A stretch of 64,000 bases of DNA from Zancudomyces culisetae HAW-14-8. Its lineage: Eukaryota > Fungi > Kickxellomycota. Shown here piece by piece: positions 1 to 20,096 of the stretch. How positions within the stretch are numbered: the stretch's first letter is position 1; the number at the start of each line of letters is the position of its first letter. Made by a program: the position numbers and the translations under genes. The notes under the pieces were generated by a model that did not search any database, was not told where the DNA came from, and saw only the letters and a program-made list of their open reading frames with translations. The stretch covers positions 248,001 to 312,000 of the forward strand of contig JBNJNM010000010.1 of assembly GCA_052426225.1 (NCBI GenBank), in the 5' to 3' direction.

Positions 1-330
1 TTTGCTTTGTTCGTCATCAAAGGAATCTTCATCTATAATATTTTACCAAAAAAACATCAGTTAAAGTATGTAAAGGTTTAAAGAGAATGAGAAAATCTGA
101 ACTACGTAAATTCCTATTAAGGAGAAAATGTTTAGAAAATTGTACGTACCAAGCTGATCGGTGATTAGATCAAAGGCTTGCTGATAATGTGCGACTTCTG
201 CATGCAATCCAGTGAGATTGAACCTATCTAAAATATACTCATCGTCGATTTCGCAGAAGAACTCATTTCCTTTTGTGTTGAGGAACCATTCCACCCAATA
301 CTTATAACCCTCTGAATCAGTTTCACTCAT
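1..330 (-). CDS. CKB1: Casein kinase II regulatory (beta) subunit, 5' part; runs off the window start
   Basis: Reads WVEWFLNTKGNEFFCEIDDEYILDRFNLTGL, the typical CK2 beta N-terminus. A GT-AG intron at 149..33 rejoins to DEDSFDDEQSK (1..32). A branch point plus acceptor (gctaac...atag) just upstream of 330 suggests one more upstream exon. Confidence 0.92.
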
Positions 331-3255
331 CGAGATACCTATGATTTTGATGTTAGCGCGTTTCTAATTTTTGTTGAAAAGTGGATTTGAAAAAAAAAAA
401 CACCGCGTGAGGGGGGATAGTTCACCTCGCTTTACAGTTAAAGCTGATAAATCAAACTTGAATATATAGTGAGTCTACTAACACCTTCTAAAAGTTGGTT
501 GTACGTGTTATTCACTAGCAAGCCCTTCGATTTCGAACAGTGGAAAACAGTTTTATCTTTTTTTTTCCAACCATGAACCACCCTATTGGGTTTGGCAAAA
601 AAAAAATTTTCCTACTTTTTTCACCATTTGTTATTTAAATCACTGTTTTCTTTGCAGTTATATCTAATGGCGGGTAGGATGCTTTTAATGAATAGTATTG
701 GCCAAATAAAATAATTTAATATAAAGACATTAATCATTTCTGGGGTCCTTGTGGATGACTCACGGGGTTTTAGCACAGTCTATTTCACATAAAAAAAGAG
801 ATAAAAAAGAAAAAGAAAAAGTGGAAGGCCATTTGTTATAGAAACAGATTATCTTCAAGATAGTAAGCACATCAGATTGTTATATCAAGGTAGTATTCCA
901 CAGTTGTTTAATGGTTTAGATCTTTGAGATGATTGGAATACCTTTGATAATACAGCAATGTAGTGACTGGAATATGTGGGTTTTCAACTCATGGTAATTA
1001 CCCACTTTCCCGAACATCTCCTGCCAATACTCGTTCTTATTTTTCTGCTAATTATATCGCACCATAAGAAGCAAAAGGTAGTTCTGAGTTTAAGTACACA
1101 GTGAAAACACGCCTATAACTATATTTCCACCGCGTATCAGGGTACTTTTAATCTTTAAAGAAAATTCATACCTCAGATACATAACAAATAGCATGCGTGT
1201 ATGGGCAACGATTTCATCGTATGAGTTTGAGAGCCCTCTATAGTAGTTTTGGGTACAAAATAGTCTCCTAATAGTACTCACCTTCAGGAAAGGATACTTT
1301 GATGGGACGAAATAAATATATATGGCTCTTATTCAACACGCAAACTACAGGAACAAGAGAATTATTGATTTTTCATCAAACTCTGAACATTACTCTCAGC
1401 TAATAGCTTTGCAGCAACATGTATGATATTGGCATCCCGTTTTTTTTCGCCGTCCGGGTCCATATACCAACAAGTATATCTTGAGAATTTTTAAAATATA
1501 ATACTATAATGAACGGAGTGCAAGTACTTTATAAACAACGATGTAGCATGCATTCTTTTAGCTAAACAATACCCCTCTCACCCAAAAAAAATGTGCTTTT
1601 TTTTATTATTACAAAGAAATCACGATTGTAAATCATTTGGAGATACAGGGGCTTTTAGTATTATACAAAGGGGTGTGGTACGAACAAAGGCTCATTATCA
1701 TCTTGGGTATATTTTTTTTACATACATATTTTAAAGATGTGAGCTATTACACTCCTTTTTATCGGAAAGTCTGAAGGTTAGTATACTTGATCAACATCAG
1801 GTAATGGCTGCTTTGTCAATATGATATTAGAATGGTGGGTTTTCAGGCAATAAGTAATGCGGTTACCAACAGAAAAACTTTCTAGAATTAGCTGGCTATA
1901 TAGGATATGCTTCACCAGGTCATACCTTGGTGCCACTTGAATACGAATTGACCAAAGGGAATTTTTAAAACAAAACGCTTTCAGCGTAAAACAAAAATTC
2001 CGAAAAAGCAGATAAGTGAAGGTAAATGGCATTCACATGACATTCCTACGCGGGATTATTACACAATCTTGGTAGTAAAAGAAGATACACATACCAAAGG
2101 GAGCTTACCAACAGGGCAATTATATTTCCCCGTTGCCTTCAACTGCAAGACCAACATCTAAGAACTTTCCACATTTTACACTTCACCCAAAAGACGTATA
2201 TAAAACAAATAAAGTCGACTCTATTACTTTCCATGCACAAATATCATTATTTCTATGATATACACATGTCGCCGAAGCGTTTATGTGGAGATGGGAGTTG
2301 AATCACCGCTATTATACAGGCGCTACCGGCAAACTTCAAGTCTACCTGTATAAAATGTGGTCTTGATAAAAAACTGGAAAACCCTTCGGTTGTATGAGCA
2401 AAAAAGAGTTAAAGAGTGCAAATGTTTTGTGTTATTTTGAGCGTAGCTGCGATTATAACCAAGTGCTGATTCTTTTTTTTTTTGCTAAACCTAAATGATA
2501 TTTTTGTTTACATCAAAATATTAAACAATTTTATTATGGACAGAGTGAGGTCTGAGTTATGTAATGGTCAGGTTTTAATTTGAGTGGTATTTATTAATAT
2601 TCTCTAAATCAAACCAATGCTATTGTACCAAATGTTATTGGTAATAATTAAAGCGAATTTGAGCTAAACACAAGCGGAAAAATACAAATGAGAGAGAGAG
2701 AAAAAAAGACAGAAACAGAAACATTGCTTGTCCAAAAAAAAAGGCAGGAAGGTTCGCTTTTTTTTAATTTTATACTCAAAAACAATTGTATGTATCACAA
2801 TAGTCTCAACTTCAACCATATTTTGATACTTTCTATCTTGCTTACCTTTAACTAGTGTGTACTTTTTTTTGCTACTAGTCATAATCAGTAGGTATACAGC
2901 ATATTTTAAAGCGGTGTTTTATCATACGAAGTATTTTTCCTAAAAAGAAAAAAAGGTAAGTATATCAATTTGATCGACTTTAGTAGCTTTGAACATTAAA
3001 CCCTAAGTCCTCAGCTGCAGCTTGCCCATCTAAATGGCTTGATGGGGATGATTGCTTTTTTATCTTTTACTATTGCTTTGTCACAATAATTTTAGATTGC
3101 AACATAATTTAATGTACATTTTGTATTATGTTCGATGGGAGTGTAGCAGTTGGGAATATCAATAGGATGTCTTTTTCTATATAAAATTTTATAACGTATA
3201 ATTCAAAGTTATTAACTGATGTATAGAATAGCGTATCAATTAAAGTGGTTATAGA

Positions 3256-4294
<1,039 letters not shown>

Positions 4295-4489
4295 TAAAAT
4301 CTTCTAAATTACGTCTACAATATAAATCAAGTTTGTTATGGAGCTCTGGATAATGGAGCTCTGCACTTTTTTTTTGTCTTAATTTTCGATGTTTTAATAA
4401 ATCCACAATGTACTAAATACTGTTTTTGTATTTCTTTTTCATGGGAATGAGATAGATAAAAAAGAAGTAGTCAAGATTCTGATTAGAAA

Positions 4490-5410
4490 GATAGTGGTGC
4501 TCCGTACCGCTGAACCACACATATGGGTTCAAGTAGCTTGGATTCACATTCCACCAGTCCCAGAAATAGTGAGCACCACCACTACTATAACTTGGGACGA
4601 ATGTGGAAGTATGTTAGATCAATCTACTAGCTCCTAGCTCTGGGTAACCCTAAAATCTTTTTCAGAAATGAAACACAAAGGACATGCACCATGTGCGTTT
4701 TTATTTTTGCTTTTGTTATGTTTATTTGGGGTATTGTTATGTTTTGAAGACTTGTTTTTTTTTAGCAAAAGTTTAAGGGTAAGATTTACGTACTTAAAAG
4801 CAGCCATACTAATACGGACACCAGTGTTGATGCACTTCTCTTAAACATGTACGAATTATAGTTTTTATATGATACTTATCAAATTTAACTGGACATGTCG
4901 CATAAAGCACAAAAGGGATGTTGATTAATTTTTACCAACCAATTCTATTTACAACGTTCCTTTAGCTAAGTTGCAGGATTTCCACTGTGCAATAGCATTG
5001 TGTAGATGATAATGGGTTTTACATTCTTGTAAGGAAAAATTCAAAAAATAATAATAAAAGTTTTCAAGCATTGCATAAGATTGTGGACCAAAGATTTAAG
5101 GTAAAACCCAAATGGACTGTTCTAGACAACGGTCAACACGTGGCTTTTAGTTGTACACATTTTTCATTCCTCTCCTTGAACTTTGTTTATACCACTCGAT
5201 AGCTGTCCTAGTAATGATAAACATGTAATCCATACTTGTTATTTCATATTAAACAAGATTGCTAGCCAGAAAGGCTCTAATATTGGTTGTTTAACATGAT
5301 CTACCAGCTTATATCTTTGAAAAGCCCTAATTCTGGTACATTTTTTGGTGCCTTTCGTTGAGTTTAGTTAGCGTGGTGGTGTTGCTTTATGTTTGAAGAC
5401 CACCAATGGC
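4490..5410 (+). ncRNA. Candidate telomerase RNA gene (structured non-coding RNA); boundaries approximate
   Basis: TAACCCTAA at 4645-4653. Helix 4559-4574/4630-4644 ends at the template. Crossing stems 4661-4667/4742-4748 and 4705-4718/4763-4771, with a U tract at 4698-4708. Enclosing helix 4495-4506/4813-4823. Sm-type ATTTTTTGG at 5340-5348. No ORF. Pairings found by eye. Confidence 0.45.
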
Positions 5411-7214
5411 ATATGAATAGTATTAAAAAAGTTGCAGTTTGAGAGAAGGAATGTTTGTCTCGTAGTATACACACTCTTGAGAGACATGTTATACATAAAG
5501 CTAGCAATATCTAGGAAATACTCTTGTGGGAGCGTCTGTTTGACTAAAAAAACTTGTCACTTATCTTCCACCCTCTTCCTCTTTTCTCCTTTCTCTCACC
5601 TCCTTTACGTCCCTCCCAAAATCAGCATTTTTTATTTACATATTTGGATTAGTATACCAAATTCTTAAACATGTGTTTATAATATGAAATGGTTGTAACG
5701 ATGGTAACAGGGTTAGTGGTATACTAAGATCAAACAACGGATTTTGTGATTTACAAACACACCATGATGAAGCTGTAAGGAAAATAGCACAAATATACTT
5801 ATCATCGAAAAATAGCCCACTTTACTCGGAGAATTCTGTCTTCTCCGCAATATTTACCCATTGTAGTGGGCAATTCTTTAGAAATAAGTTAATTATTTAG
5901 GACTAAAATTTACATTTTTATTTTTCCTGCTTTTGGGGTGTACGCAAATAAAGAAATACTATTTCATAAAATGCCGATTAATCTAAACCATAAATACACC
6001 TTTTTCTGGGTAGAAAACGAGAGAGTACCAGAAGCTGCAACATTTTTCACCACAGAATCGTTGCCAGAATGCGATTAAAAAGCTTTCCTAAACCAAAAGT
6101 ATAGAGAATTTTCTACCCCGCCAAAATTCACGCTGCAAAGAATCACAAAATGTATTTTTAGCATTTTATGCATCATTATATGGGATTACAGAGGGGGTTG
6201 CGTTAGTGTATAAACTATATATATACAAAACCAACATTTGTTTTTTTTTTCTGCGGTTAACACTTGTAATTGCACTTCAAATGCTCAAGAACCTGTCTTT
6301 TATTACCCCATCAAAAGGAGAAATAGTAGTTGTGCATACTTGTTGCACCGAAAAAGTATAGTTTGCTAAGCTGTAATATTTTAGGTGCAAGCTCACTTTC
6401 TTACAAATAAATACATAAATAAATACAGTCAGAATTAATCTCCAACACTTGTTTATCAATTCATCAAGAGGAAAAGTCTAATTTTTTAAAGTTGATTTAT
6501 TATAACGTTAGTGTTAGTTACAGTATTGAATAGTATCCTGGATTATATTATATTATATTATCGGTTTGCAACTTTTTTTTTTAAAAAAAAACAAAAACAA
6601 ATGATTTAAAGGGCGCATAAGCTGAATCACCAGTACTGTGCAATATAACATATTAGGGAGTAAAAATTAATAACAACAGCAATAGCAACAGCAAGAAACA
6701 AAAAAGAACCAGTTAAACTGTTAATGAGCCTAGAAAAGCCTGCTATTTGATTATAACATTTACTACCACTCACCCTCAAATTGATTCTAATAAGAGTGAA
6801 TATCATCAAAATTTTGATATCATAAACACAAGATTGATAATTGTCACCGCTGTATTAGTAGAAACTCACACTTTTTACTTATACGTGGTACTACTGTCAG
6901 AACGAATTTGTGGATTAAAAAAGTCGGATCAAGTATCAGAACTATAACACTTCAACATTAATTATTTTGATTATTGTTAGCAACAGAATACTTTGTATCG
7001 AAGCTAACTATAAATGGAACCAATATTGGTATAAAAACGAGAGCTCAAAAAAAAGCATCATATATCTGTATTAATACAAACAATTGTAATTGCAAATTCG
7101 AATTCGAAACGGTCAATACAATACGATCTTTTTGATGCCATTTAGGTGAGATACATTCTATTAATAAGTAATAATAGCGACACCCAATATCACAGTCAAA
7201 ACCTTTTAAAGAAA

Positions 7215-9899
7215 ATGGGTAGAAAGAAAATAAATATCAGCGAAATTAAAAATTCAAGACAAAAAACTGTTACATTCGCCAGGAGAAGGTCTGGTCTTAT
7301 AAAAAAGGCGCATGAGTTGAGCGTTTTGTGCGGGGTAAAAGTTGCTCTTGTAGTTTTTGATACAAAAAATGCAAGTCATGTATATGCATCTACAGAAACA
7401 CCAGACGCACTATTTAAAAGATATATGGAAAAGTGTTTTATAACAAACGAATCGAGAAAGCGAAAGGACAATGTAGGTGCTGATGATGAGGATAATGGAA
7501 CATATGGATTTGATAGCAACGGTTCTTTTGTTAAGCGAAAATTGGCCGTAGTTAATGAATACAAAATAATGAAAGGCGATTCAAGTTCCGAGGGGGTTCA
7601 GATAAAACACAATAAACAATATCACGATCCAAACGCAGTTTGTTTGCAAAAAAAGGCTATCGAACCTCACCCTTCTGGTGATAAAATTTCATGGAACGCA
7701 AACCCCGCTGGGTTTGCACCACAGCAAATACTACCAATAAATAATTACACCGAATTGAGAGGCGAAGGGTATGGTAGTGGTAGTGGTAATGGTACTGAGG
7801 CTCTACTGGGAGCAAAAAAAAAAAGCACTTCAATAGCTGCTTCTTCTGGTGATAAGATTGGTGAGAACCCGACGTCTTCGCTCTATCAGAACAAAGTAGC
7901 ATTAGGTGCACAGCAATATTTTGTAAAACCACAGTATAAATATGGATATGAAACTGATGCGGATGTAATTCTAGGCTGCAATGCTGGCGGACACAATAAT
8001 ACTCAGGAGCTTGGAGTGCAGGGGTATGCAATACCTCAGCAGATTTTAAAACCAACTGAAATGTACAACTATGAGAATGAATTTGGTGTGCGAAATAGTA
8101 GTAACACAAATAATTTTGGAGGTGAAGAAATTTCCAATGGAAGACGTATTGCTGAATCCAATACAATAGATGTCTCAGGATTAAACTTGGCAAATCGTGA
8201 ATATAGTAATAATGACATTTTTGGTGGATTTATCTACAAACAGCAGGAACAAGCGCATACCCCTGAAAACGCCGCCATGTTTGGAATGCTACAGGAAAAT
8301 AGTATTTACCAACTAGGCATTAGTAATCAAATCCAAGGTGTTGACAATGGCCAAATGGATGGCTCGGGTGCTTCAATGTTACCATGGGGTGGCAGATATA
8401 TCGGAAGTGTTAATAGTAAAACCAATCCCCTATCAGTAAACGAAAATGTTACTTTAAATCCCTTTGGCGAAAGAATAATAGGATCTGCACTTTCAAGCAT
8501 TGGAAAGAATCCAGAAGGAAAAAATAAGGGATCGGATGGTTCAAAAGAGAAAAAAGCAAGCAGTAAAGAAAAATTGGGTATAGGCTCCAAAGTAGCAGGA
8601 GGTAGAGGAGCTTTAAAAAACAGGCTTGTTAGTAATCCCAGCTCCAGGTTTTTATCGAATGGAAATAAAACAAAAGGTGCATCATCTGGAAACTCTGGAA
8701 ATCGTATACACTCGTTGTCTACAGTCGAGTCAACATTAATGTCAGACGCAATCAAATCAGCAAAAACGGAAATATTCAATAATAACGAAAAAAGTAAAAA
8801 GAGAAAGCTGGCCCAGGCTATATCAGCCAAACAACAAGTATCAGATACAAGAAGTACCACAGAAAAACAACCTTTAAGCTATGACGAGGGTGGCAGACCA
8901 GAGATGGCTTCTGCCAATATAGATGTAGGATCCAATTTCCAGCCTCAGTTGGCGAACACGTTTTTTATGCAAACAGGAAATACAGAAGCAACTGGATTTG
9001 GTATGTGGGGTGTAGACTATGATAGTATAGCTCTTCAAAACGGTGTTGGTATTTCTGAAAAAGAGCTATTAGAGGCCAACTTACAGGGTGCTCAGTTTAG
9101 TGATATGGGTATGCTAGGGTTAGATAAGAACCTGTGTGCAAAAACGCAAATACCTAATGCTATGGAGTATCACATGAATATGAATAACGTAGCCAGTAAC
9201 GATGATGATAATCATGTAAACAGGGCTTTACTTGAAAGTATTAGTAGTGAAGAGGGTAGTGTGTTGAATACCTCGACCAGAAAATCTGATGAGAATACTG
9301 GAAGCGAAAAGGCTGGTGCAGTAAATGATTCCATGAAAATAGAAAGAAGAGTATCAGAGCAATGGTTTGACAACTTGAAAGATCGTCCAAGTAGCTTAGA
9401 AGGGATGAATGGACTTGTTGTAAATTTTTCAAATGCTAATGATGCTAAAGACGGACAGTCGATAACTCCTACAAGAATTAAAAATACTACATCTTTGGAT
9501 AGTGGGAAAGAAAAAATGGAAGCAACACTAATAGATGTTACGTTTAATCGAGGCGCCATTGGAGGTGAGCTTGGGGGTATGTTTGATATAAAGTATGGTG
9601 TTGATTCTGGTACTTTGAATACAGATATCGGGATGCCAATGCAGTTACAGCTTGAACCAGGAAACCAGCACGGATATGCAAATGATCCATTAATACTTCA
9701 AAACCTGGAAGGTAACACTGGTATTGTTGGTGAACATGGACTGGGATATAATATGGATGAGGTCAGTTATTACAACAACTATGTTATTCCAGGTGACATT
9801 ACGCTTGGTGTCGTTTCCAATAGGGGGACAGAAAATGAACCAAAAATGGGCAAAGGGTTTGTGGGTCAATATGTAAATGAGGAGTTTTTTAGCGTTTGA
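7215..9899 (+). CDS. MEF2-type MADS-box transcription factor (Rlm1-like) with a long disordered C-terminus
   Basis: MGRKKINISEIKNSRQKTVTFARRRSGLIKKAHELSVLCGVKVALVVF begins at ATG 7215; the ORF track starts at an upstream GTG. Single exon. Confidence 0.9.
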   Translation: MGRKKINISEIKNSRQKTVTFARRRSGLIKKAHELSVLCGVKVALVVFDTKNASHVYASTETPDALFKRYMEKCFITNESRKRKDNVGADDEDNGTYGFDSNGSFVKRKLAVVNEYKIMKGDSSSEGVQIKHNKQYHDPNAVCLQKKAIEPHPSGDKISWNANPAGFAPQQILPINNYTELRGEGYGSGSGNGTEALLGAKKKSTSIAASSGDKIGENPTSSLYQNKVALGAQQYFVKPQYKYGYETDADVILGCNAGGHNNTQELGVQGYAIPQQILKPTEMYNYENEFGVRNSSNTNNFGGEEISNGRRIAESNTIDVSGLNLANREYSNNDIFGGFIYKQQEQAHTPENAAMFGMLQENSIYQLGISNQIQGVDNGQMDGSGASMLPWGGRYIGSVNSKTNPLSVNENVTLNPFGERIIGSALSSIGKNPEGKNKGSDGSKEKKASSKEKLGIGSKVAGGRGALKNRLVSNPSSRFLSNGNKTKGASSGNSGNRIHSLSTVESTLMSDAIKSAKTEIFNNNEKSKKRKLAQAISAKQQVSDTRSTTEKQPLSYDEGGRPEMASANIDVGSNFQPQLANTFFMQTGNTEATGFGMWGVDYDSIALQNGVGISEKELLEANLQGAQFSDMGMLGLDKNLCAKTQIPNAMEYHMNMNNVASNDDDNHVNRALLESISSEEGSVLNTSTRKSDENTGSEKAGAVNDSMKIERRVSEQWFDNLKDRPSSLEGMNGLVVNFSNANDAKDGQSITPTRIKNTTSLDSGKEKMEATLIDVTFNRGAIGGELGGMFDIKYGVDSGTLNTDIGMPMQLQLEPGNQHGYANDPLILQNLEGNTGIVGEHGLGYNMDEVSYYNNYVIPGDITLGVVSNRGTENEPKMGKGFVGQYVNEEFFSV

Positions 9900-10726
9900 T
9901 CGTTTTATATTGTTTTGGTATTTTTTTGGTATTTGATAATTCCTGTAAATGATGCTGTATTTCTCTGTTTTATTTGTCTTGTAACGCTTTATGTGCTATT
10001 TTGTAATAAAAAAAATACTTTATTTGTAAATCAATAGTTACGTTTTCTAAAGCACGCTTAAAAAAAAACTATTATAGAGCTAGATGTGATGTTTGCTATC
10101 TGAGTGAATTATGTTACAACAGATGGAAAAAGCCTCAGGACGATGTACATAGTTTCTGAGGTTATGGGTGTATACTTGCGAAAAATATGGTGGAGGGTCA
10201 GATATATAAAGCAAATCTTCAAACTTTCATCCAAAGCCGAGAGTTTACAGATGAAAAAAAAAGCAGACACTTGAAACACTTGGTGTTTTTTTTGGGATAA
10301 CTGGTACTTGGTTTATTGTGTGGTTTTTGCCTTTCAATTACTTAAATACGAAACATTATTCCATCTATTTTATTTCAAATTAAAGGGTTTTTTGGTTGGG
10401 GGAATTTGAGATTAATACATGGTTGGCCCACAAATTTGGGGATCAAAAGTGTAATTAGACGGAAATAGACATTGGCTTGTAGGTAGGATAAATTAAATAA
10501 ATAAATAAAATAGACCTTTGCTTACAAAATCTAAATTTTGAGTGGTGATTAAAACACATTCTCAACTAAATAGGAAACAGAGCTATTTAAACTGTTCTCT
10601 GAGGGACCGATATAAAGACAAGTAAGTGAAAAAAAACTAGCGAGCAAACAACGAGGTAAAAGGGACTATCGTGACATATTTTGTGTTTTTTTCAAGTATT
10701 ATCCCAACTCCGAAATACTATAGATC

Positions 10727-12997
10727 ATGGATGTTAAAGTGAATGAAGATAGTTTCGACATTTTGAAGGCTCCAAGCGGTATATCTACCCCACAATGGGA
10801 GGCTATCACAAATGTAGAAAGCGTTTTAGATGAAGCCAAGAGGAAAATAATGGAAGAAAGAAGTAAAAAGAATATGAAAATGGAGGATGTTCAGCCACAT
10901 GAAGTGTTGCAGCCAAGTGATGGTGAGGAACAGGAAGCCCTGCTACACAGTGTGGAGGCACAACTAGAAGAAAGAGAAATTCCGGGTATAACTGGTTATA
11001 AAGAAAAAGAGGAAGAAGAAGAATTGTACTACGAAGAGCTAGAACAAGAGCTAATGAAACTAATGAAACAACCAATTCTAACACCTGAAGATCTCAAGGA
11101 TGGCCATTCTGCTAGAAAAATGAAGGAAACGCTAGAGCTGGAGAGTGAAGCTAAAAAGATTGGAGAGGATTTGATATATTGCATGGGACTGAGAGACAAA
11201 TATCAAAAAATCAGTGTTCAATTGGAAGGAGACAACCCAAAAAATAGCAGCGAGTGGGAGATATACCCTCCCCCACCACCACGAGCATGGAAGGATTTCA
11301 AGAAATCAGCTAATATCAAGTCAAGTGAGTTTAACTTTAGTGAGTGCAAAATACCAGGAGCACAAGATAAACGACTGGAGTATGAGTTGGTATCTGACGG
11401 GGGTGACTTTGATGGTACATATAGGATGTACAATAAGGATACTGGGGAAACCACTAGCGATGTGCCGGGGGTTAGAGAATATTACAAAGATCTAAAGTTT
11501 TTGCACAAGATGGGGAATAAAGGGCCTATGAAAAGTTGGACATACAAAAGGTTAAAGTATCTTGAAAATAAATACCAGATGTATGTTTTGCTGAAAGAAA
11601 GCCAAGAAAATATGGAAAGTAAGATGGTACCACATCGAGATTTCTACAATGTCAGAAAAGTGGATACACACGTTCATTTGGCCAGTTGTATGAATCAAAA
11701 GCATTTGCTGAGGTTTATTAAGCACAAAGTAAAAACTGTATCAGAAGATGAGGTGGTATACAATGGGATGACGTTAAAGCAGGTATTCGAGAGTTTAAAG
11801 TTGACAGCATATGATCTTAGCATCGATACGCTAGATATGCACTCAAATAAGCAGACATTTCACCGGTTTGACAAGTTTAATCTGAAATACAATCCTATTG
11901 GCGAAAGTAAGTTGCGAACCATATTCCTTAAGACTGATAATGATATTAAAGGAAGGTATCTCGCGGAGTTAACAAAAGAGGTTTTTTCAGATTTGGAGGT
12001 CAATAAATATCAAAAGGCTGAATACAGAGTTAGTATATATGGAAACGGTGGGTTGGACGAATGGTCAAAGCTGGCAGCTTGGGTTATTGATAACAAGGTC
12101 ATTTCAAACAATGTCAGGTGGTTGATTCAAATACCACGGTTATATAACGTGTACAAGAAAAACAGCAGAATAAGTGATTTCAAAGAACTGATATACAATA
12201 TATTTGAGCCACTTTTCAGGGTCACCAAAGACCCAACATCCAATCCGAAGCTGCATGTATTTTTACAGCGAGTAGTGGGCTTTGATTCTGTTGACGATGA
12301 AAGCAAACCAGAGAAAAATAGGGGGCAATATGACAGTTATATAGCTCCCAGCGAATGGAATGGGAATCACAACCCTCCATACTCTTACTATAGCTATTAC
12401 ATATATGCAAACATGGCTGTATTAAACCAGTTTAGAAAGGTACACAAGTTTAATACATTTGTGTTTCGGCCACACGCGGGAGAGGCAGGTGACATTGAGC
12501 ATTTAGCATCTTCGTACCTGCTAGCACAATCCATCTCACATGGAATAATGTTGAGAAAAGCAGTCGTTCTGCAGTACTTATTTTATTTAAACAAGATTGG
12601 TATAGCAATGTCACCGCTTTCCAATAATGCGCTATTTTTGTCGTACGAGAGAAATCCATTCTATGCATATTTTATGCGAGGCCTGAACGTTTCTTTGTCA
12701 ACCGATGATCCATTGCAATTTCATTTCACAAAGGAACCATTAATCGAAGAGTATTCTATTGCCGCGCAAATATACAAGCTTTCAAATGTAGATATGTGTG
12801 AATTAGCTCTAAACTCTGTTTTACAAAGTGGATTTGAGACACAGTTGAAAAACAACTGGGTTGGCGAGTTCAATAGTGATGGTGGCTTCACCCCTCACGT
12901 ACAAAAAACCAATGTACCTGCTTCCCGGTTGAATTTCAGAAACCAAACTTATAATCACGAGGTGAAAAACCTGTTCCACACAGTGCAACGATTATAA
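10727..12997 (+). CDS. AMD1: AMP deaminase
   Basis: Motifs HRDFYNVRKVDTHVH, FHRFDKFNLKYNP, RPHAGEAG and SLSTDDPLQFH. Intronless, 756 aa. Confidence 0.97.
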   Translation: MDVKVNEDSFDILKAPSGISTPQWEAITNVESVLDEAKRKIMEERSKKNMKMEDVQPHEVLQPSDGEEQEALLHSVEAQLEEREIPGITGYKEKEEEEELYYEELEQELMKLMKQPILTPEDLKDGHSARKMKETLELESEAKKIGEDLIYCMGLRDKYQKISVQLEGDNPKNSSEWEIYPPPPPRAWKDFKKSANIKSSEFNFSECKIPGAQDKRLEYELVSDGGDFDGTYRMYNKDTGETTSDVPGVREYYKDLKFLHKMGNKGPMKSWTYKRLKYLENKYQMYVLLKESQENMESKMVPHRDFYNVRKVDTHVHLASCMNQKHLLRFIKHKVKTVSEDEVVYNGMTLKQVFESLKLTAYDLSIDTLDMHSNKQTFHRFDKFNLKYNPIGESKLRTIFLKTDNDIKGRYLAELTKEVFSDLEVNKYQKAEYRVSIYGNGGLDEWSKLAAWVIDNKVISNNVRWLIQIPRLYNVYKKNSRISDFKELIYNIFEPLFRVTKDPTSNPKLHVFLQRVVGFDSVDDESKPEKNRGQYDSYIAPSEWNGNHNPPYSYYSYYIYANMAVLNQFRKVHKFNTFVFRPHAGEAGDIEHLASSYLLAQSISHGIMLRKAVVLQYLFYLNKIGIAMSPLSNNALFLSYERNPFYAYFMRGLNVSLSTDDPLQFHFTKEPLIEEYSIAAQIYKLSNVDMCELALNSVLQSGFETQLKNNWVGEFNSDGGFTPHVQKTNVPASRLNFRNQTYNHEVKNLFHTVQRL

Positions 12998-13857
12998 TCG
13001 CTTGAAATCACTCTCCAATTTCCTTCAATTCTCTCTCATATCTCTTACCTACATTTTTTCTTTTTTATTCTTTATCTAATGTTTTTTTATCTTGCCTTGA
13101 TTATAGTTGAGCTTATTATTTCCCTAATTATTACTCAATCATTTATAGACATTAACATTGGATAGTCTAAAATAAAGATAATTAAATGATGAAAACACAA
13201 ATAAAAGCATCACTAAAAATGTAAAATTTATAGAACACACTAAACGTCTATGGATCGCCTCAATGTTCAAACATATGCTATATTGGTAAAGGTTGATGGT
13301 TTTGACTAAGAGTGCTTTTTTTGGTAGCAGCCGATTTTTCTCTTGACCATTGAACCCGTCTTTATTAGCCGATATATACACTTTGGAATGTAAAATAAAT
13401 ATGGACATATAAAAGGAGCCGGATTAGCATAGTGATAAGCATTCTCCGTATTCCAATTGTGAAAATTGGTAGTAGCTCAAAAATTAGGTTCACCCAGCCG
13501 ATTTTAGCGTTATACACCCATAAAAAAACGAAGTTGTGCTTTTAAAAAATATCTTTCACACAAGACCCGTAGTATAGCCAATAAAAAGGGTAAAATGATA
13601 TGGGTATAACAAAAAAAGTGGTGCCACTCTCTCTGAGATAGATGTGTGCATTTGTATGCATATTAAATGTCATCTATAACTATGGCTAGAGGTAGATGTA
13701 TTGGTGCGCTTCATTACATTATTATTTACATCTATATTTAGATACTTTGTTTATTTAGTAAATCAGAGTCCAATAGGTATCCACTTCTCCAAAATTCACT
13801 GTCTCTACAAAACGGCTGCTGTCTCTTGATCATAAATATTTTTATTTTGGTAGCCGT

Positions 13858-13910
13858 GATAAATAATAAATAATAAATAATAAATGATAAATAATAAATA
13901 ATAAATAATA
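13858..13910. repeat. Heptamer microsatellite (AAATAAT)n, about 7 copies
   Basis: aaataataaataataaataataaatgataaataataaataataaataata. Confidence 0.85.
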
Positions 13911-15915
13911 GTGATGTGTAAAAATAGAGCCCTCTCCCTCTCGCTCTCCCCTTTATCTTGTGACATTAAACATTATTGTGTAAATTGTTTATTCAGATGG
14001 CTACATAAAAATCACATTGATGGGTAACTCCAGATAAAGAGATTTGTATCAAACCAGAGGTATGATTAAGAAATTGCGACAGTTTTTACATTAATATTAT
14101 ATGTACGCTGTACACGCCTTACTTTCCCATTCACACAGTTTATACGCGAAGTGTTACGATTCGCGTCTTTTCTAAACTAGATTTTTCCGTCTATTTTTAT
14201 CCACTTTTTTATTCAAAAAAGTGCTGAATAAAAGTAATCACTATTATTGAATAGCGTGACAAAAATTGCAAATCATAAAAAAAAGATGAACATTTCACAA
14301 ACAAAAACCGCGGCAAGATGTTAGGGATCCAAAATCAAACTAACACCCAATGTTTACAATCACTGAAAGCCTGGGACTCACCACCAGTTTGCTGCTTTTT
14401 TTACTGTGTTTATTGGCCTTGAAAAGATATGTACCTCTTGGTGGGTGATAGGAACCAAGTAGGTTTCAGTACTTTAAGCGAAGCATACTAGGCCATGGTT
14501 GTATATACAGTCTATCAAAGTGCCTTCGCAGGGATATTCTGTATAATTTCACGATACTGTGGCATCGGGCTTGTGTTTATGCAGACGCCGGTTTTAGTTT
14601 CAAATTTGCTTGTTCACCAAATAACATTAGGGAGCATGACGATCTCTGATGCGATTAGAGGTCGACCAAGACCCGCACGCTAAAATAAAGACAGTGCTGA
14701 TGGTCAAGTCTGGAACTAAAAGAGATTTAGCGCTACTTTTTGCCATTCATTTCCAAATCCTTGTATTTCAAAAATATAATTGAAATTGTATATGCAAAGA
14801 CAATTTCGATTTTCCAAGACGGAGTTCAGAGTATTTTTGCAACACAATAAAGGGGGAAAAAAGCGGACCAACCATGTGATTTTTCTACAACAATGAGGAA
14901 AATCTTATGGATATTGAAGTTCACATGGGTTAATTTAGCATTTTCAATTACTTTGCAACAAACAAAGGCAAATGAGATGGATGGTTGAGGCGGATAATTT
15001 AGACATTTCGCGCAAAAACCAGAGGCAGAAAAATCAGTTAAATCTGAAAAAGGCAATCAAAGGCAAGAACATGAGAGGCAGTGGGGGCTAAAATATATGT
15101 ACACACCCCCATCTCCATTAAAACATTTAAAATAAGCACAATGTTTTAAAAAATTGATTTATATAAAACATTCGTGTAAAATTGCAGCATTATTTTCGAG
15201 CTTTTTTTTTCCAAAGTGTTGGCAATGCTGAAAGTCTAAAATAAAGAAACAATTTTTAGCAATTAGACCAAAAAGGCGGACAAATAAAAAGCATTCAAGA
15301 AAAAACTAAGTATGCTGGATCGCAGGTTTTTTAAGGTTCATCATATCTGCTGAGGGACCATATTTTTTTTTGAAAAAGTTTTATCAGTTTATATGGATGT
15401 TTATGAAAGAATACTAACACCATAAAAGCTATTTATGAAGTATACCAATAAATCCATTTTTAGTAAAAGTAAAAAATATTAGGGCATAGGAAAAAGGAAA
15501 AAGGAAAAAGATAGATAATAAAGCAACCTGGTATGTAAGCTTTTACTTTCCTTCACTAGAAATCAAAAACAAGCGAATAAGAAGGATATAGCGGGGAGAC
15601 TTACAGACAAGAATCAAAAGTGGAATATCGTATTTCCCAACTCATTGAAAGGTACTGATTGCAACTTTTTGGCGAGGCTTAAAAAAAAGGGGAGAGTTGT
15701 GGATAGATGCTACATCGGAAAAAGACACAGTAAAAGCAACATTGAAAAAGAATCATACTTTTTTTTTGCATACTTACCAACTATACACCAACCTGTAAAG
15801 TAGTCGGAGCTATTAACCTGTTTGATTATATCAAAACCTCCTCTTTTTATTTAGAAAGTTCAATTCCAGATTTATTTTGCTGGAATTAGGAGTAGGTGGA
15901 TAAAACTACGATAGA

Positions 15916-18900
15916 ATGAACGAATATTTAATTGGAATTGCAGAAGCAGCTAGGGATAAAGGGGGTATGGATATGAGAGCTCACAGCGTAGATTTTCGGG
16001 GAAAATCTACGGAAATCGAGTCCATCCGGGGTGAAGAGAATAAACCTGCAAAAAACACTAGAGAGGATGAGATGAACTTTGAATCCGAAAAATTGAGAGA
16101 TGATATGCAAAGATTGAACATATGCTATGTAGACAAAGCTGGGGACAGCAATGTTAGCGTCTATGAGGGTCTCGAAATGGGGCACGACAGAAAAATGGCG
16201 CATAACAAGAGTGGTCCGGGAGTAAAAAACTATAGTAGAGTTGGAAACAGCAGAGTACTTGATTTTGTAGAGAAAGTAACGGATATAGCTAGCATTAGCG
16301 GAGGGGAGGGGAGTGGCAGTGAAGTAAATAGTACTAGTAGGAGTGGTGGGAGAAATACTATAGGTAGGCACGTACTTAGCAGTGGTGATAGTATAAGAAG
16401 AGAGCAAAGTGTTTCACCAAGGAACGTACAGGAGCTAATACTAAATTATGAACACATAATTGAGGGGAGCAAAAGTGGGTCACAGACAGGAAACAGCCCA
16501 CCGAGCATGATGCTTCCAAGGAAAAAACAGTTTGACCGAGATCGGGCATTCAAAGCTTTATCGATGGTCGGGCCAGAAACGACTGTAAGGTATACTGCAT
16601 CAGAATTTACGCCAACAGCGCCACAAAAGCGACAGCAAGCGAGGACGCTTTTGGGTGAGACGTTGGAGGAACAATTAAGAAGGGGTGGTGATAGAAGGAG
16701 AGGAATGAGAGGGAATATGGGCGTGGGAGCGGATGCGAACATAAACGTGGGTAACCATCCCCATCGAATTACAGTGTATGAAATTGATGAAATGCGGAGA
16801 CAATATCAAAAAGAAACAAAAGAACAGCAGATAGGGACAAGGATGAGAAGGAATACCAACGCCTGCAATGATAGAAGCGTTAATGGAGACTGGAGTGGTG
16901 GTAACAGAGGTAACAATAATGTGAGTAGGAATTGGAATCGGCACTCGATGGTCTTAGGGGAAGGTATAATGGACAAGAAACATTTCGATGTCCAGCGTGA
17001 GACACACTGTCGGGAAACAAGCTATTTATGGGATGAGGGATTGGAGAATTGGAGTGGAGCGGATTTTACAAGAGATCCAAGCCGAAAAAGAGAAAGTACT
17101 AGGAATGGGTTAGTGGATTCTGGATTAACAAGAATCAATAGAGGAAACTTTAGTGGGGCACAAAGAGGGGGAGCCGTGGAACCTTTAAGGAGCTCGGACA
17201 TGTCTGTTTCTGGAAAGGTGTTTGAAACCAACACTTCAGCAAAAAATACACCAACAGCAACCCCAGTAACAGCAACAGCACCAGCAATAGGAGCGGGAAC
17301 ACGAGTACCATCAGGTAGACAGGGCAGAAGGGATAGCATTATGGTGCGCACAATGTCATATCAGTTGCCGGATTTGCGTGAACAAGAACATACAATCACC
17401 TATGGAAACGAGACACAAGAGAACCACGAGCATGTGATAGCAAGCAGAGAGGAAAACCGTAAATTACAAAAGTTGGTTAACGAAAACATGAATCTCCGCA
17501 TCCAAAACAACAAGTTATCGGAGTATCTAAATCGGGTTACGGATGGGGAACTCGGAATGGTTATGGAAGAAATGAATCGAGTTGCCTCAAGTAATGCAGT
17601 GGCTAATCGAGAGATGAACCAGTTGAACATACAGCTTAATGAATACAAAACGCAGCTACGGGACTTGAAAATGCAGCTTTCAGCCCATTTGGAGGATGAT
17701 CGAATCAAGAGTAAACAGGCTGCGCGTGAAAAGGAGCGGATACTTGCTATGCTCAGCGAATCAGAAAGGCGCGTAAAGGATCTGAGCGCAGAGCTTTCAG
17801 GGCACGATGATTACATCAAGGCCCTTCAGCGAGAAAATGAAACTCTGCAGCAATTGTGTGAGCAGCTCCAACATGACTCGATCGAGGAGAGGTCTAACGC
17901 AGAAAAATGGATGCAGCTTGCACGGATAAAAGGCTTCGACAATACAAAGCGACAATTAGCGGAAGTTGATGAGTCTAGTGCGACCAGTGCTGATAAGAAA
18001 AATAGGTATCGAGAGAGTATGGCTACTTCGTCTTCAATAACTACAACAATAATTCCTTCATCCACAGCTGATGGGAATTACAAAAATACAAAGGGATCAA
18101 AAGATGCAGCTGTACAGAAGGATTTAGCACTGGCCCTTAAGTTGGCTGAGCAACAGAGAAATTTGGCACACGAGGAATACGCTTTGGCAGTTCAAAGGTA
18201 CGAAGCTGAAATTTGTAACTACCAAGACAGACTAAAATTTTATCAGGATAGGGCAACTGAATTGGAGGCTAAGGTCAACAAACTTGAGTCTTTTATTGTT
18301 GACTCGAGCTTTGACTACAACAAAGACACCAACAGCATTAAGCACAACGACGATTCGGAACTCGTTGATCTTTTAAAACAAAAGTTAGAGTTGGCTGAAA
18401 AAGAATCCAAGTTTAAAGATCGTCAACTTGATCAGCTGAAGCTGCGTCTTTCAACTTTATCTAGTATAGCTTCTCCTTCACGAAACACCCTCACTCCTGT
18501 TTATCAAAAGCAACAACAACAACAACAACAACAACAATTCCTCCCAGATTCACCTTGGTCATCAGTATACAATAAAAACGTCACAGTTGGTGTGGGTATA
18601 GGTACCAGCACTAGTAATAGTAACAGCAACACCTCCAACCCCTTTATTACTCACAACCCTGACATCACCAATGCCAGAAATGATCACACTGCTAGTGGTT
18701 CCAATGAAAATAATAACAAAAATAATGCTGGTAATATTGGTGATATCGATAATACGGACTTAATAGCAGCTAGACTCAATTTACTTGGAGAGAAGTCGCT
18801 TCAACATAAGCAAAAAGCTCCTATACTTGTTTTAAATGCTACTGAAATGGATAATAAAAAGGATATCATTATCAATGAAGAGTTTGACGACAACCAAAAC

Positions 18901-19098
18901 GGCGATTTTGACATCGCCAACCAGCCAACACAGCGTCAGCATCAGCCGCCACCACCGTCTATTGATGATGTAGACAACAGTATTGCTACACCAACCGCAG
19001 CCAACGGTGCACAATATTGTATTGTAAAAAGTCGTAAGGACGGAACTCCAGTTGTGGCCGATTTGAAAAACTCGAGTATTTTTACCCAGCTATTTTGA
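15916..19098 (+). CDS. Large coiled-coil protein with a degenerate centrosomin motif 1 (Mto1/ApsB/Pcp1-like gamma-tubulin complex receptor)
   Basis: 1060-aa ORF. SREENRKLQKLVNENMNLRIQNNKLSEYL resembles the CM1 pattern (LREQ..I..L.KENFNLKL.I..LEE.L) and is followed by long heptad segments and a poly-Q tract. The ORF is certain; the function is tentative. Confidence 0.55.
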   Translation: MNEYLIGIAEAARDKGGMDMRAHSVDFRGKSTEIESIRGEENKPAKNTREDEMNFESEKLRDDMQRLNICYVDKAGDSNVSVYEGLEMGHDRKMAHNKSGPGVKNYSRVGNSRVLDFVEKVTDIASISGGEGSGSEVNSTSRSGGRNTIGRHVLSSGDSIRREQSVSPRNVQELILNYEHIIEGSKSGSQTGNSPPSMMLPRKKQFDRDRAFKALSMVGPETTVRYTASEFTPTAPQKRQQARTLLGETLEEQLRRGGDRRRGMRGNMGVGADANINVGNHPHRITVYEIDEMRRQYQKETKEQQIGTRMRRNTNACNDRSVNGDWSGGNRGNNNVSRNWNRHSMVLGEGIMDKKHFDVQRETHCRETSYLWDEGLENWSGADFTRDPSRKRESTRNGLVDSGLTRINRGNFSGAQRGGAVEPLRSSDMSVSGKVFETNTSAKNTPTATPVTATAPAIGAGTRVPSGRQGRRDSIMVRTMSYQLPDLREQEHTITYGNETQENHEHVIASREENRKLQKLVNENMNLRIQNNKLSEYLNRVTDGELGMVMEEMNRVASSNAVANREMNQLNIQLNEYKTQLRDLKMQLSAHLEDDRIKSKQAAREKERILAMLSESERRVKDLSAELSGHDDYIKALQRENETLQQLCEQLQHDSIEERSNAEKWMQLARIKGFDNTKRQLAEVDESSATSADKKNRYRESMATSSSITTTIIPSSTADGNYKNTKGSKDAAVQKDLALALKLAEQQRNLAHEEYALAVQRYEAEICNYQDRLKFYQDRATELEAKVNKLESFIVDSSFDYNKDTNSIKHNDDSELVDLLKQKLELAEKESKFKDRQLDQLKLRLSTLSSIASPSRNTLTPVYQKQQQQQQQQQFLPDSPWSSVYNKNVTVGVGIGTSTSNSNSNTSNPFITHNPDITNARNDHTASGSNENNNKNNAGNIGDIDNTDLIAARLNLLGEKSLQHKQKAPILVLNATEMDNKKDIIINEEFDDNQNGDFDIANQPTQRQHQPPPPSIDDVDNSIATPTAANGAQYCIVKSRKDGTPVVADLKNSSIFTQLF

Positions 19099-20096
19099 GT
19101 ACTGACTTTTCATTTGTATTTTCTGAATGTACTAGTGTGTTTATATGTATTATTTTTTTTAAGTAAAGATGGAAAATCGATTCAAGTTCTAAATTTCCGG
19201 GAAGAAAGGCCAGGATTACTGTGCTAATTAAAACCGAGTGGTCATTCAGGGAAAAAAGTAATGTGTTAATATCACGGCATCATGAGTAATTGTTGTTCTA
19301 GACGAATCTGCAAAAGTGAATATTTTAGTACACCGTACTTTGGAAAGGCAAGGAAAATAAATGGTCAAAGATGAAAAACCAGAACTATTTCCCAGTGTGG
19401 TGAGGGTGGAGTGGGGGGGGAGGGTGAGGGGTAGGGAAATTCTTTCGACTATGATGTAGAGTTGGTTGTTGACTTTATAAAACCTCGCCCTAGAATTTTT
19501 ATTGAAAAGGGGGTGGGGGAGTATATTAAGAAGAGTTCTAGCTACCAGTCATTTAAAACGGAGAGGTAAAACAAAACGTTTGAATGGTAAGGAAGTAGGG
19601 TTGAAATATAATACGCTTTTTACTTTATCAATAAAGACTATTATGGATAGTGAAAATAAATGCTCTTCTAAGGTGCGCAAAGTCGCACTCATTTACTTAT
19701 TTGCTCACTTTCCACACTTATGCTGTGAACAGAGGAGCAGGAAATATACTTGCGCAAAGAAAAAAGAACATTATAAATTTGGGAAACGTAATTTGAAGTT
19801 ATTCGCACAAAAATAAATGTAAAAGTAAAGGCAAAAAAAATAAAATCCACAACCAAGCTTTCCTGATAACAATGGCTTAAAAAAAGAACAAAAAACATTG
19901 TGAAAATTAATTTTGAATTAAGGTCCAGTTTTCGCCCAAGAACAATACCCAATTATTGATTTGCAGTTAGTTAATAAAGACCGAACTAAAAATAAATTAG
20001 GCAATAGGTAAAGTATTAAGCTCCAAAAGGTCTATAAAAGTGTAAATACTAAATTACAGCCGAAAAGCCAAATTCGATAAGCTTCAGAATAGGGAA

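What the first reader, a model, noticed from the sequence alone, without database searches (positions are those of the whole stretch)
4490..4823. Candidate telomerase RNA template/pseudoknot core downstream of Ras
Seen in the sequence, in order: (1) TGGTGCTCCGTA (4495-4506) pairs with TACGGACACCA (4813-4823), 11 bp with one bulge, enclosing the whole unit. (2) CCCAGA..TAG.GAGC (4559-4574) pairs with GCTC.CTA..TCTGGG (4630-4644) and ends exactly at (3) TAACCCTAA (4645-4653), 1.5 copies of the TTAGGG complement. (4) TTCAGAA/TTTTGAA (4661-4667/4742-4748) crosses CTTTTGTTA/TAGCAAAAG (4710-4718/4763-4771), or alternatively TGCTTTT/AAAAGCA (4708-4714/4796-4802), giving an H-type pseudoknot with a U tract (4698-4708) and an A-rich 3' strand. 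Established: fungal and vertebrate telomerase RNAs have a core-enclosing helix, a template boundary element, a ~1.5-repeat template and a U-A.U triple-helix pseudoknot in this order, and they are usually missed by annotation. Inference: this is the organism's telomerase RNA. Caveats: the 9-mer alone is expected roughly once by chance in a window this size, so the case rests on the ordered structure. Competing pairings also exist (4494-4502/4571-4579; 4545-4562/4593-4605).
Basis: partly seen in the sequence, partly recalled or inferred. Interest (0 to 1): 0.9.

Follow-up and report, generated by a model that had tools for sequence, protein, structure and literature searches.

The report
Possible telomerase RNA core, unproven
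Downstream of a Ras gene in the mosquito-gut fungus Zancudomyces culisetae lies a stretch laid out like the core of a telomerase RNA; two of its helices are rarer than chance predicts, but with no evidence of expression, conservation or a second essential domain it is more likely not the telomerase RNA (about 1 in 4 that it is).

Summary
The genome is Zancudomyces culisetae. It has TTAGGG telomeres and a TERT gene.

Against matched controls the parts differ in weight.
- The 9-mer TAACCCTAA is at chance level: about 172 non-array copies lie in the genome.
- The 11-bp enclosing helix as described is ordinary. Its 15-bp extension is modestly unusual (p about 0.03-0.07).
- The helix ending exactly at the 9-mer is rare (about 4 in 10,000 positions). 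But folding predicts that a competing long hairpin wins.
- The U-tract pseudoknot is weak as described and rarer in an extended form (p about 0.007-0.03).

On structure, enclosing helix and pseudoknot, the locus ranks first of 151 TAACCCTAA sites.

Against the reading:
- there is no Rfam match;
- there is no structure signal in the pseudoknot region or in the 600 nt downstream, so no CR4/5-like domain;
- there is little promoter space;
- all statistics are post hoc;
- several hundred sites with other template permutations are untested;
- at least ten rival "telomerase RNA" loci were noted by this scan in the same genome, on other DNA.

Conservation could not be tested because no close relative or synteny was found.

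My odds: telomerase RNA about 0.25, coincidence about 0.5, another structured RNA about 0.2.

The parts
3257..4294 (+). Ras gene (five exons, ends CKCLIL, stop at 4292-4294), the upstream neighbour. AATAAA signals follow at about 4295 and 4397.
   Evidence: Read from the sequence and ORF list.
4490..4506 (+). 5' strand of the enclosing helix. It pairs with 4813-4829.
   Evidence: It is part of the MFE of 4488-4832. At -20.1 kcal/mol it is reached by 4/150 control sites, 5/200 shuffles and 7.3% of anchors.
4534..4628 (+). Long imperfect hairpin inside a GC-rich island (46-49% GC against 27-30% in the flanks). It competes with the proposed boundary helix.
   Evidence: z = -2.98 on the + strand and -1.92 on the - strand. 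GC profile. Pair probability of 4557-4563/4592-4598 is about 1.
4559..4644 (+). Proposed template boundary helix: 4559-4574 pairs with 4630-4644 in 6+3+4 bp, and its 3' end abuts the 9-mer.
   Evidence: At -20.1 kcal/mol it is rarer than in about 10,700 anchors (4 hits) and all 150 9-mer sites. It costs +5.8 to +6.4 kcal/mol against the MFE.
4645..4653 (+). TAACCCTAA, 1.5 copies of the complement of TTAGGG. This is the candidate template.
   Evidence: The same 9-mer is the template of Ustilago maydis TER (PMC9564094).
4659..4750 (+). Pseudoknot stem 1: 4659-4667 pairs with 4742-4750, 9 bp with two G-U pairs, -5.0 kcal/mol.
4698..4708 (+). U tract (UUUUUAUUUUU) directly 5' of stem 2.
4709..4772 (+). 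Pseudoknot stem 2: 4709-4718 pairs with 4763-4772, 10 bp with four consecutive U-A pairs, -8.7 kcal/mol. It is part of the MFE.
4813..4829 (+). 3' strand of the enclosing helix.
4912..4963 (+). 12-bp hairpin downstream of the core. It is the only robust local helix in the proposed distal part.
   Evidence: Present in the centroid. The older assembly has G4956>A, which turns a U-G pair into U-A.
5340..5348 (+). Sm-like site AUUUUUUGG, followed by the hairpin 5376-5405.
   Evidence: Three looser matches to A-U(4-6)-G-R lie in 2.9 kb, so this carries little information.
7215..9899 (+). MEF2-type MADS-box gene, the downstream neighbour.
   Evidence: 99% identical to the Z. culisetae MADS-box transcription factor 1.

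Best explanation
Most likely this is not the telomerase RNA. It is the 2.9-kb spacer between the Ras and MADS-box genes of Zancudomyces culisetae. The spacer holds a GC-rich, hairpin-forming island of about 150 nt (4490-4644), followed by a T-rich stretch. One of the roughly 172 non-array TAACCCTAA copies in the genome happens to sit at the 3' edge of the island. The island's internal complementarity supplies a helix that ends at the 9-mer. The T-rich and A-rich runs behind it supply crossing helices. On this reading the ensemble has no function in telomere synthesis. What is shown: composition, folding and control statistics. What is inferred: absence of function.
For: - The 9-mer is at chance level. 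U. maydis has 782 template-like loci, of which one is the TER (PMC9564094).
- The proposed boundary helix has a pair probability of about 0 and loses 6 kcal/mol to a long hairpin.
- The pseudoknot region (4600-4850) and the 600 nt downstream fold no better than shuffles, with z from -0.25 to +2. The whole 926 nt gives z = -0.54.
- Islands this structured occur about every 4-5 kb in the window.
- No Rfam telomerase family matches in the window or the genome.
- One random anchor of 1251, with no template at all, also met the structure, enclosing-helix and pseudoknot thresholds.
- At least ten other loci in this genome were read as telomerase RNA by first-stage readers.
- My metrics were fixed after the model was seen.
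Against: - A helix of -20.1 kcal/mol ending within 0-2 nt of a given point occurs at about 4 in 10,000 positions and at none of 150 other 9-mer sites.
- The U-tract pseudoknot score is reached by 0.7% of anchors, and the enclosing helix by 7%.
- The three measures are nearly independent in natural sequence. The product times about 800 sites gives about 2e-4 chance loci per genome before any penalty for post hoc choices.
- The locus ranks first of 151 sites by a wide margin.
Confidence: 0.5

Rival explanations
1. This is the template/pseudoknot core of the Z. culisetae telomerase RNA. The helix 4490-4506/4813-4829 closes the core. The helix 4559-4574/4630-4644 stops reverse transcription at U4645. 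UAACCCUAA is copied into TTAGGG repeats. Stems 4659-4667/4742-4750 and 4709-4718/4763-4772, with the U tract, form a triple-helix pseudoknot. The RNA would be made by RNA polymerase II, possibly cut out of a Ras read-through transcript as in Ustilago maydis.
For: - TTAGGG telomeres and TERT are present.
- The template is identical to that of UmTER, which is itself processed from the 3' UTR of an mRNA (PMC9564094).
- The boundary helix is exceptional: 0/150 sites, 4/10,738 anchors, 5/1500 GC-matched shuffles.
- The pseudoknot score is the best of 151 sites.
- The enclosing helix and stem 2 are in the MFE.
- The three measures are independent.
- The locus is single copy and not coding-like.
- It lies in an ORF-free 2.9-kb gap. 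G-U pairs in both pseudoknot stems favour the + strand.
Against: - There is no expression or conservation evidence.
- The boundary helix is outcompeted.
- Stem 1 is weak. Loops of 41 and 23 nt and a U-rich third loop are unlike canonical telomerase pseudoknots.
- No CR4/5 or P6.1-type domain is detectable.
- Only about 60 nt lie between the last Ras poly(A) signal and the helix.
- Sites with other template permutations and the rival loci are untested.
- There is no Rfam match.
Confidence: 0.25
2. This is a real structured RNA or RNA element that is not telomerase RNA. It could be a hairpin RNA, a 3'-end or termination element of the Ras transcript, or an unknown small RNA of about 340 nt closed by the 4490/4829 helix. 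The 9-mer beside it would be a coincidence.
For: - 4490-4660 folds at z = -3.1 with 0/200 shuffles as good. The hairpin 4534-4628 gives z = -3.0 on the + strand against -1.9 on the - strand.
- It is a GC island in an AT-rich spacer.
- The closing helix is in the MFE.
- Inter-assembly divergence is lower at 4295-5420 (about 7 per kb) than at 5421-7214 (about 17 per kb).
Against: - No Rfam family matches, even at E <= 10, and there is no tRNA.
- There is no paralogue.
- GC-corrected, the island is only about the 14th most structured place in 64 kb.
- This reading does not explain why a strong helix ends exactly at the 9-mer.
Confidence: 0.2
3. The GC-rich island is a small unannotated coding exon: the + frame is open over 4401-4634 with a stop at 4635-4637, and the - frame over 4416-4613. 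The T-rich stretch would be its 3' UTR.
For: Frames are open on both strands over the island. A GC-rich stretch followed by a T-rich one is what a gene end looks like.
Against: - There is no Pfam match and no paralogue.
- The only hit among 1.8 billion representatives is a spurious tandem-repeat protein. The Atlas gave nothing.
- Codon-usage score is -0.02 per codon, against 0.18 +/- 0.10 for real coding chunks.
- There is no usable start codon, and Ras is complete without it.
Confidence: 0.03

Closest known systems
Ustilago maydis telomerase RNA (UmTER; PMC9564094)
   Same: The template is identical (5'-UAACCCUAA-3'). The position is downstream of a protein-coding ORF on the same strand. The order is boundary helix, template, then pseudoknot inside an enclosing helix.
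   Different: The UmTER T/PK domain spans about 690 nt and is followed by a proven CR4/5 domain with P6.1. UmTER was found by TERT pull-down, Northern, knockout and comparison of 18 species. Here the core would be 340 nt, no CR4/5 is detectable, and none of those tests exists.
Ascomycete telomerase RNAs (Neurospora, Aspergillus, yeasts; Rfam RF02462 and RF01050). Architecture as I recall it from the literature, not tested here.
   Same: A core-enclosing helix, a boundary helix directly 5' of the template, a U-A-U triple-helix pseudoknot, and an Sm site near the 3' end.
   Different: RF02462 gave no match in the genome and no telomerase family matched the window. The Sm-like site at 5340 is at chance level. 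No spliceosomal 3'-end signal was seen.
Vertebrate telomerase RNA core (Rfam RF00024)
   Same: The topology is P1-type helix, template, then P2b/P3-type pseudoknot with a U tract before the U-A-rich stem.
   Different: RF00024 gave no match. Loops 1 and 2 are 41 and 23 nt, against about 8 and 0 (from my own knowledge). The third loop is U-rich, not A-rich. No H/ACA domain was looked for systematically.

Membership tests
Telomerase RNA | A template complementary to about 1.5 telomere repeats of the same organism | tested here: met
   TAACCCTAA lies at 4645-4653. TTAGGG arrays sit at contig ends. About 172 other non-array copies also meet this feature.
Telomerase RNA | The organism has a telomerase reverse transcriptase | tested here: met
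   A Telomerase_RBD match of 74.6 bits lies on C8.
Telomerase RNA | A template boundary helix directly 5' of the template | tested here: inconclusive
   A 13-bp helix of -20.1 kcal/mol ends at 4644. It is rarer than in all controls but 4 of about 10,900. Its pair probability is about 0, and it costs +6 kcal/mol against the competing hairpin.
Telomerase RNA | A core-enclosing helix around the template and pseudoknot | tested here: met
   4490-4506/4813-4829 is in the MFE. Significance is modest, p about 0.03-0.07.
Telomerase RNA | An H-type pseudoknot with U-A-U triples 3' of the template | tested here: inconclusive
   Crossing stems with an adjacent U tract score best of 151 sites and are reached by 0.7% of anchors. 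But stem 1 is only -5 kcal/mol, the loops are long, the region gives z > 0, and 605 crossing stem pairs are available there.
Telomerase RNA | A template-distal TERT-binding domain (CR4/5 three-way junction with P6.1, or an equivalent) | tested here: not met
   There is no structure signal over 4829-5420 (z = -0.25 and +0.03). Only four weak all-A-U hairpins resemble P6.1, about what chance gives. Power is low, so this is absence of evidence.
Telomerase RNA | A discrete transcript bound to TERT | not testable with these tools
A Z. culisetae transcriptome exists (PMC12611240).
Telomerase RNA | Template and helices conserved, with covariation, in related species | not testable with these tools
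   The nearest other genera are about 60-78% identical in protein and are not syntenic. The metagenome scan was empty. The only comparison is a second Z. culisetae assembly, 99.2% identical, with one change in a loop of the core.
Telomerase RNA | A match to a curated telomerase RNA model | tested here: not met
   The window has no Rfam hit. RF02462 and RF00024 find nothing in the genome. This is expected for so divergent a family.
mRNA-derived telomerase RNA (UmTER type) | Lies in the 3' UTR or read-through of a protein-coding transcript on the same strand and is cut out of it | tested here: inconclusive
   The strand is the same, and the start is 196 nt after the Ras stop codon. Processing cannot be tested here.

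The most novel reading that the evidence does not exclude
The interval 4490-4829 is the catalytic core of the first telomerase RNA identified outside Dikarya among fungi (Zoopagomycota, Harpellales). It would be compact, use the same UAACCCUAA template as Ustilago, and sit in the read-through of a Ras mRNA. That placement would suggest that mRNA-derived telomerase RNA biogenesis is older than the Basidiomycota.
Probability: 0.25. Interest if true: 0.7.

Novelty: not a real feature. Interest (0 to 1): 0.35.

Why it matters
In the paper library searched here I found no telomerase RNA described for any early-diverging fungus. A confirmed one would link the animal and Dikarya RNAs. It would also test whether biogenesis from an mRNA 3' UTR, known from Ustilago, is ancient.

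As it stands, the value of the locus is that it is cheap to test. Z. culisetae is culturable and has a transcriptome and a near-complete genome. If the locus is a coincidence, it is a useful caution: an ordered telomerase-like layout can be drawn at many places, and this scan drew one at ten or more other places in this same genome.

Tried and rejected
- Rfam: gathering and E <= 10 scans of the window, and RF02462 and RF00024 over the genome. Nothing was found.
- tRNA-like reading of AGTGG and GGTTCAAGT in the island: ARAGORN found nothing, and neither arm pairs.
- Repeat or transposon reading: the locus is single copy.
- Coding reading: see the rival explanations.
- Relatives:
  - AMP deaminase neighbours in Furculomyces are not syntenic.
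  - The MADS orthologues of Smittium simulii and Furculomyces have no Ras within 10 kb.
  - The metagenome scan with the MADS protein was empty.
  - Two TAACCCTAA sites near the Furculomyces MADS gene score as ordinary.
  - The spliced Ras protein was not joined for a search. The exons alone are too short for the length filter, so Ras orthologues could not be fetched.
- RNAduplex on whole flanks gave meaningless long duplexes. I replaced it with seeded local helices.
- L130, the second-best site, overlaps the stop codon of a 944-codon ORF and is not a candidate.
- I tried to locate the rival locus "between MAS1 and a cell-wall gene". No template-like stretch of 8 nt or more lies in the DNA I could fetch around the M16 peptidase genes (the 10 kb to one side of three of them, plus about 1.5 kb on each side of the matches). 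That rival therefore remains unscored.
- One script call returned no answer and was rerun smaller.

Full report
**What the window is.** The window is G000:C10:248001-312000 of a 27.1-Mb, 25-contig, 35% GC genome.
- The MADS-box protein at 7215-9896 is 99% identical to "MADS-box transcription factor 1" of Zancudomyces culisetae.
- The contig sizes equal those of the published PacBio-HiFi assembly of that mosquito-gut fungus (Harpellales): largest contig 5,239,357 bp, N50 2,524,970 bp (PMC12611240).
- The genome carries long TTAGGG arrays at contig ends and a TERT gene. A telomerase RNA with a CCCTAA-type template must therefore exist somewhere.
- In the paper library I found no telomerase RNA described for this lineage or for any early-diverging fungus.

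**The observation.**
- The interval lies 196 nt after the stop codon of a five-exon Ras gene (3257-4294). It is 2.4 kb before a MADS-box gene. All three are on the + strand, in an ORF-free spacer of 2.9 kb.

**Controls.** I fetched 150 other non-array sites that contain TAACCCTAA, out of about 172 in the genome. I also used 1,251 to 5,038 evenly spaced anchors in the window, 5,700 anchors in the fetched loci, and dinucleotide shuffles.

**The 9-mer.** It carries no weight by itself. There are 2 in the window against 0.71 expected. Genome-wide there are 113 isolated copies, fewer than the reversed control at 315. In U. maydis, 782 loci carry a putative template and one is the TER. Its template is the same UAACCCUAA (PMC9564094).

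**The enclosing helix.**
- As described (11 bp, -14.6 kcal/mol) it is matched by 51 of 80 control sites.
- It extends to 4491-4506/4813-4828 at -20.1 kcal/mol. That value is reached by 4/150 control sites, 5/200 shuffles and 7.3% of anchors.
- It is part of the minimum-energy fold of 4488-4832.

**The boundary helix.** This is the strongest point.
- Taken alone, 4559-4574/4630-4644 (6+3+4 bp, -20.1 kcal/mol) ends exactly at the 9-mer.
- A helix that strong ending within 0-2 nt of a fixed point occurs at 0/150 9-mer sites, 0/5,038 window anchors, 4/5,700 other anchors and 5/1,500 GC-matched shuffles. That is about 4 in 10,000.
- However, its 5' strand is predicted to be locked in a long imperfect hairpin, 4534-4628. 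That hairpin gives z = -2.98 on the + strand and -1.92 on the - strand.
- The boundary helix has a pair probability of about 0 and costs +5.8 to +6.4 kcal/mol.

**The pseudoknot.**
- The region offers 91 stems and 605 crossing pairs, and 29/80 control sites hold an unconstrained pseudoknot as good.
- I then required a U tract just before a stem that contains UUU.
  - An extended version (-13.7 kcal/mol) is reached by 0/150 control sites, 9/1,251 anchors, 16/600 shuffles and 4/304 T-rich windows.
- The loop limits were set after I had seen the model.
- Stem 1 is weak, loops 1 and 2 are 41 and 23 nt, and loop 3 is U-rich. This is unlike the canonical pseudoknots as I know them.

**Combining the measures.**
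- The three measures are nearly independent in natural sequence.
- Scored on local structure, enclosing helix and pseudoknot, the locus ranks 4.5, 5 and 1 among 151 sites. Its rank sum is 10.5 against 22 for the next site.
- That next site overlaps the stop codon of a coding gene and is not a candidate.
- The product of the three probabilities, times about 800 template-like sites, gives about 2e-4 chance loci per genome. With a 30- to 100-fold penalty for post hoc choices this becomes about 0.005-0.016.
- My rough estimate is that a true telomerase RNA would show all three features this strongly, and this compactly, with probability about 0.004.

**Evidence against the telomerase reading.**
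- No Rfam family matches.
- Sliding windows show structure only at 4400-4650. The pseudoknot region gives z from +0.4 to +2.0.
- 4829-5060 and 5060-5420 give z = -0.25 and +0.03, and the whole 926 nt gives z = -0.54.
- So there is no sign of the second essential domain (CR4/5), which is about 100 nt long in U. maydis.
- P6.1-like hairpins and the Sm-like site at 5340 are at chance level.
- GC-corrected, the island is only about the 14th most structured place in the window.
- First-stage readers flagged at least ten other telomerase RNA candidates in this genome. I could score none of them.

**Tests that could not be run.**
- Other Harpellales are too distant and are not syntenic.
- The older Z. 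culisetae assembly is 99.2% identical. The core differs only at 4754-4755, in a loop. This is uninformative.

**Other readings of the island.** It does not look coding, tRNA-like or repeated.

**Verdict.** The layout is real, and it is less trivial than the 9-mer suggests. Identity as telomerase RNA is unproven. My odds are:
- telomerase RNA: about 0.25;
- coincidence in ordinary spacer DNA: about 0.5;
- another structured RNA element: about 0.2;
- a small coding exon: about 0.03.

Noticed in passing
L163:2200-3450 (G000:C13:1785200-1786450): A 944-codon ORF rises to 60-67% GC over about 1.2 kb in a genome of 35% GC. Its stop codon is the first TAA of a TAACCCTAAC. The composition suggests foreign origin or unusual selection.
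   Followed up: partly
G000:C7:267069-267093 and C7:319219-319264: Interstitial runs of the 7-nt variant CCCCTAA (TTAGGGG). The same variant occurs sporadically inside terminal arrays on C6, C9, C11, C12 and C15.
   Followed up: no
G000:C9:330862-330898: Three tandem copies of a 12-nt unit, CTAACCCTAACA. This is an interstitial telomere-like repeat.
   Followed up: no
window 1-19420 versus L167 (GCA_001969505.1, LSSK01000224.1): The two Z. culisetae assemblies differ by about 0.8%. The differences are densest in the spacers at 5421-7214 and 9900-10726 (15-17 per kb) and sparsest in the AMP deaminase gene (3 per kb).
   Followed up: partly
L167:11839-13397 versus window 10727-12997: The older record calls no gene where the Ras gene lies. 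It calls only a 269-residue product where the window has a 756-codon AMP deaminase ORF. That explains why that protein had no near-identical database match.
   Followed up: no
window 4338-4363 and 4636-4647: ATGGAGCTCTG occurs twice, 15 nt apart, in the Ras 3' flank. AGCTCTGGATAA (4342) recurs as AGCTCTGGGTAA (4636), running into the 9-mer. The meaning is unknown.
   Followed up: no
window 4912-4963: A 12-bp hairpin. The other assembly has G4956>A, which changes a U-G pair to U-A and so keeps the helix. This is a single data point.
   Followed up: partly
window about 18200, - strand: This is the only one of 1,251 random anchors that met the structure, enclosing-helix and pseudoknot thresholds together. 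There is no template-like 8-mer nearby.
   Followed up: partly
L169:21243 (+) and 21652 (-), Furculomyces boomerangus: Two TAACCCTAA copies in opposite orientation, 409 nt apart, lie in a spacer 8.5 kb downstream of the MADS orthologue. On my three measures they are ordinary.
   Followed up: yes
L111 and L124 (G000:C6:2211649-2212659 and C12:639793-640803): Both show the same extreme local helix (-20.9 kcal/mol) at the same offset. They are probably copies of one repeated element that carries TAACCCTAAC.
   Followed up: no
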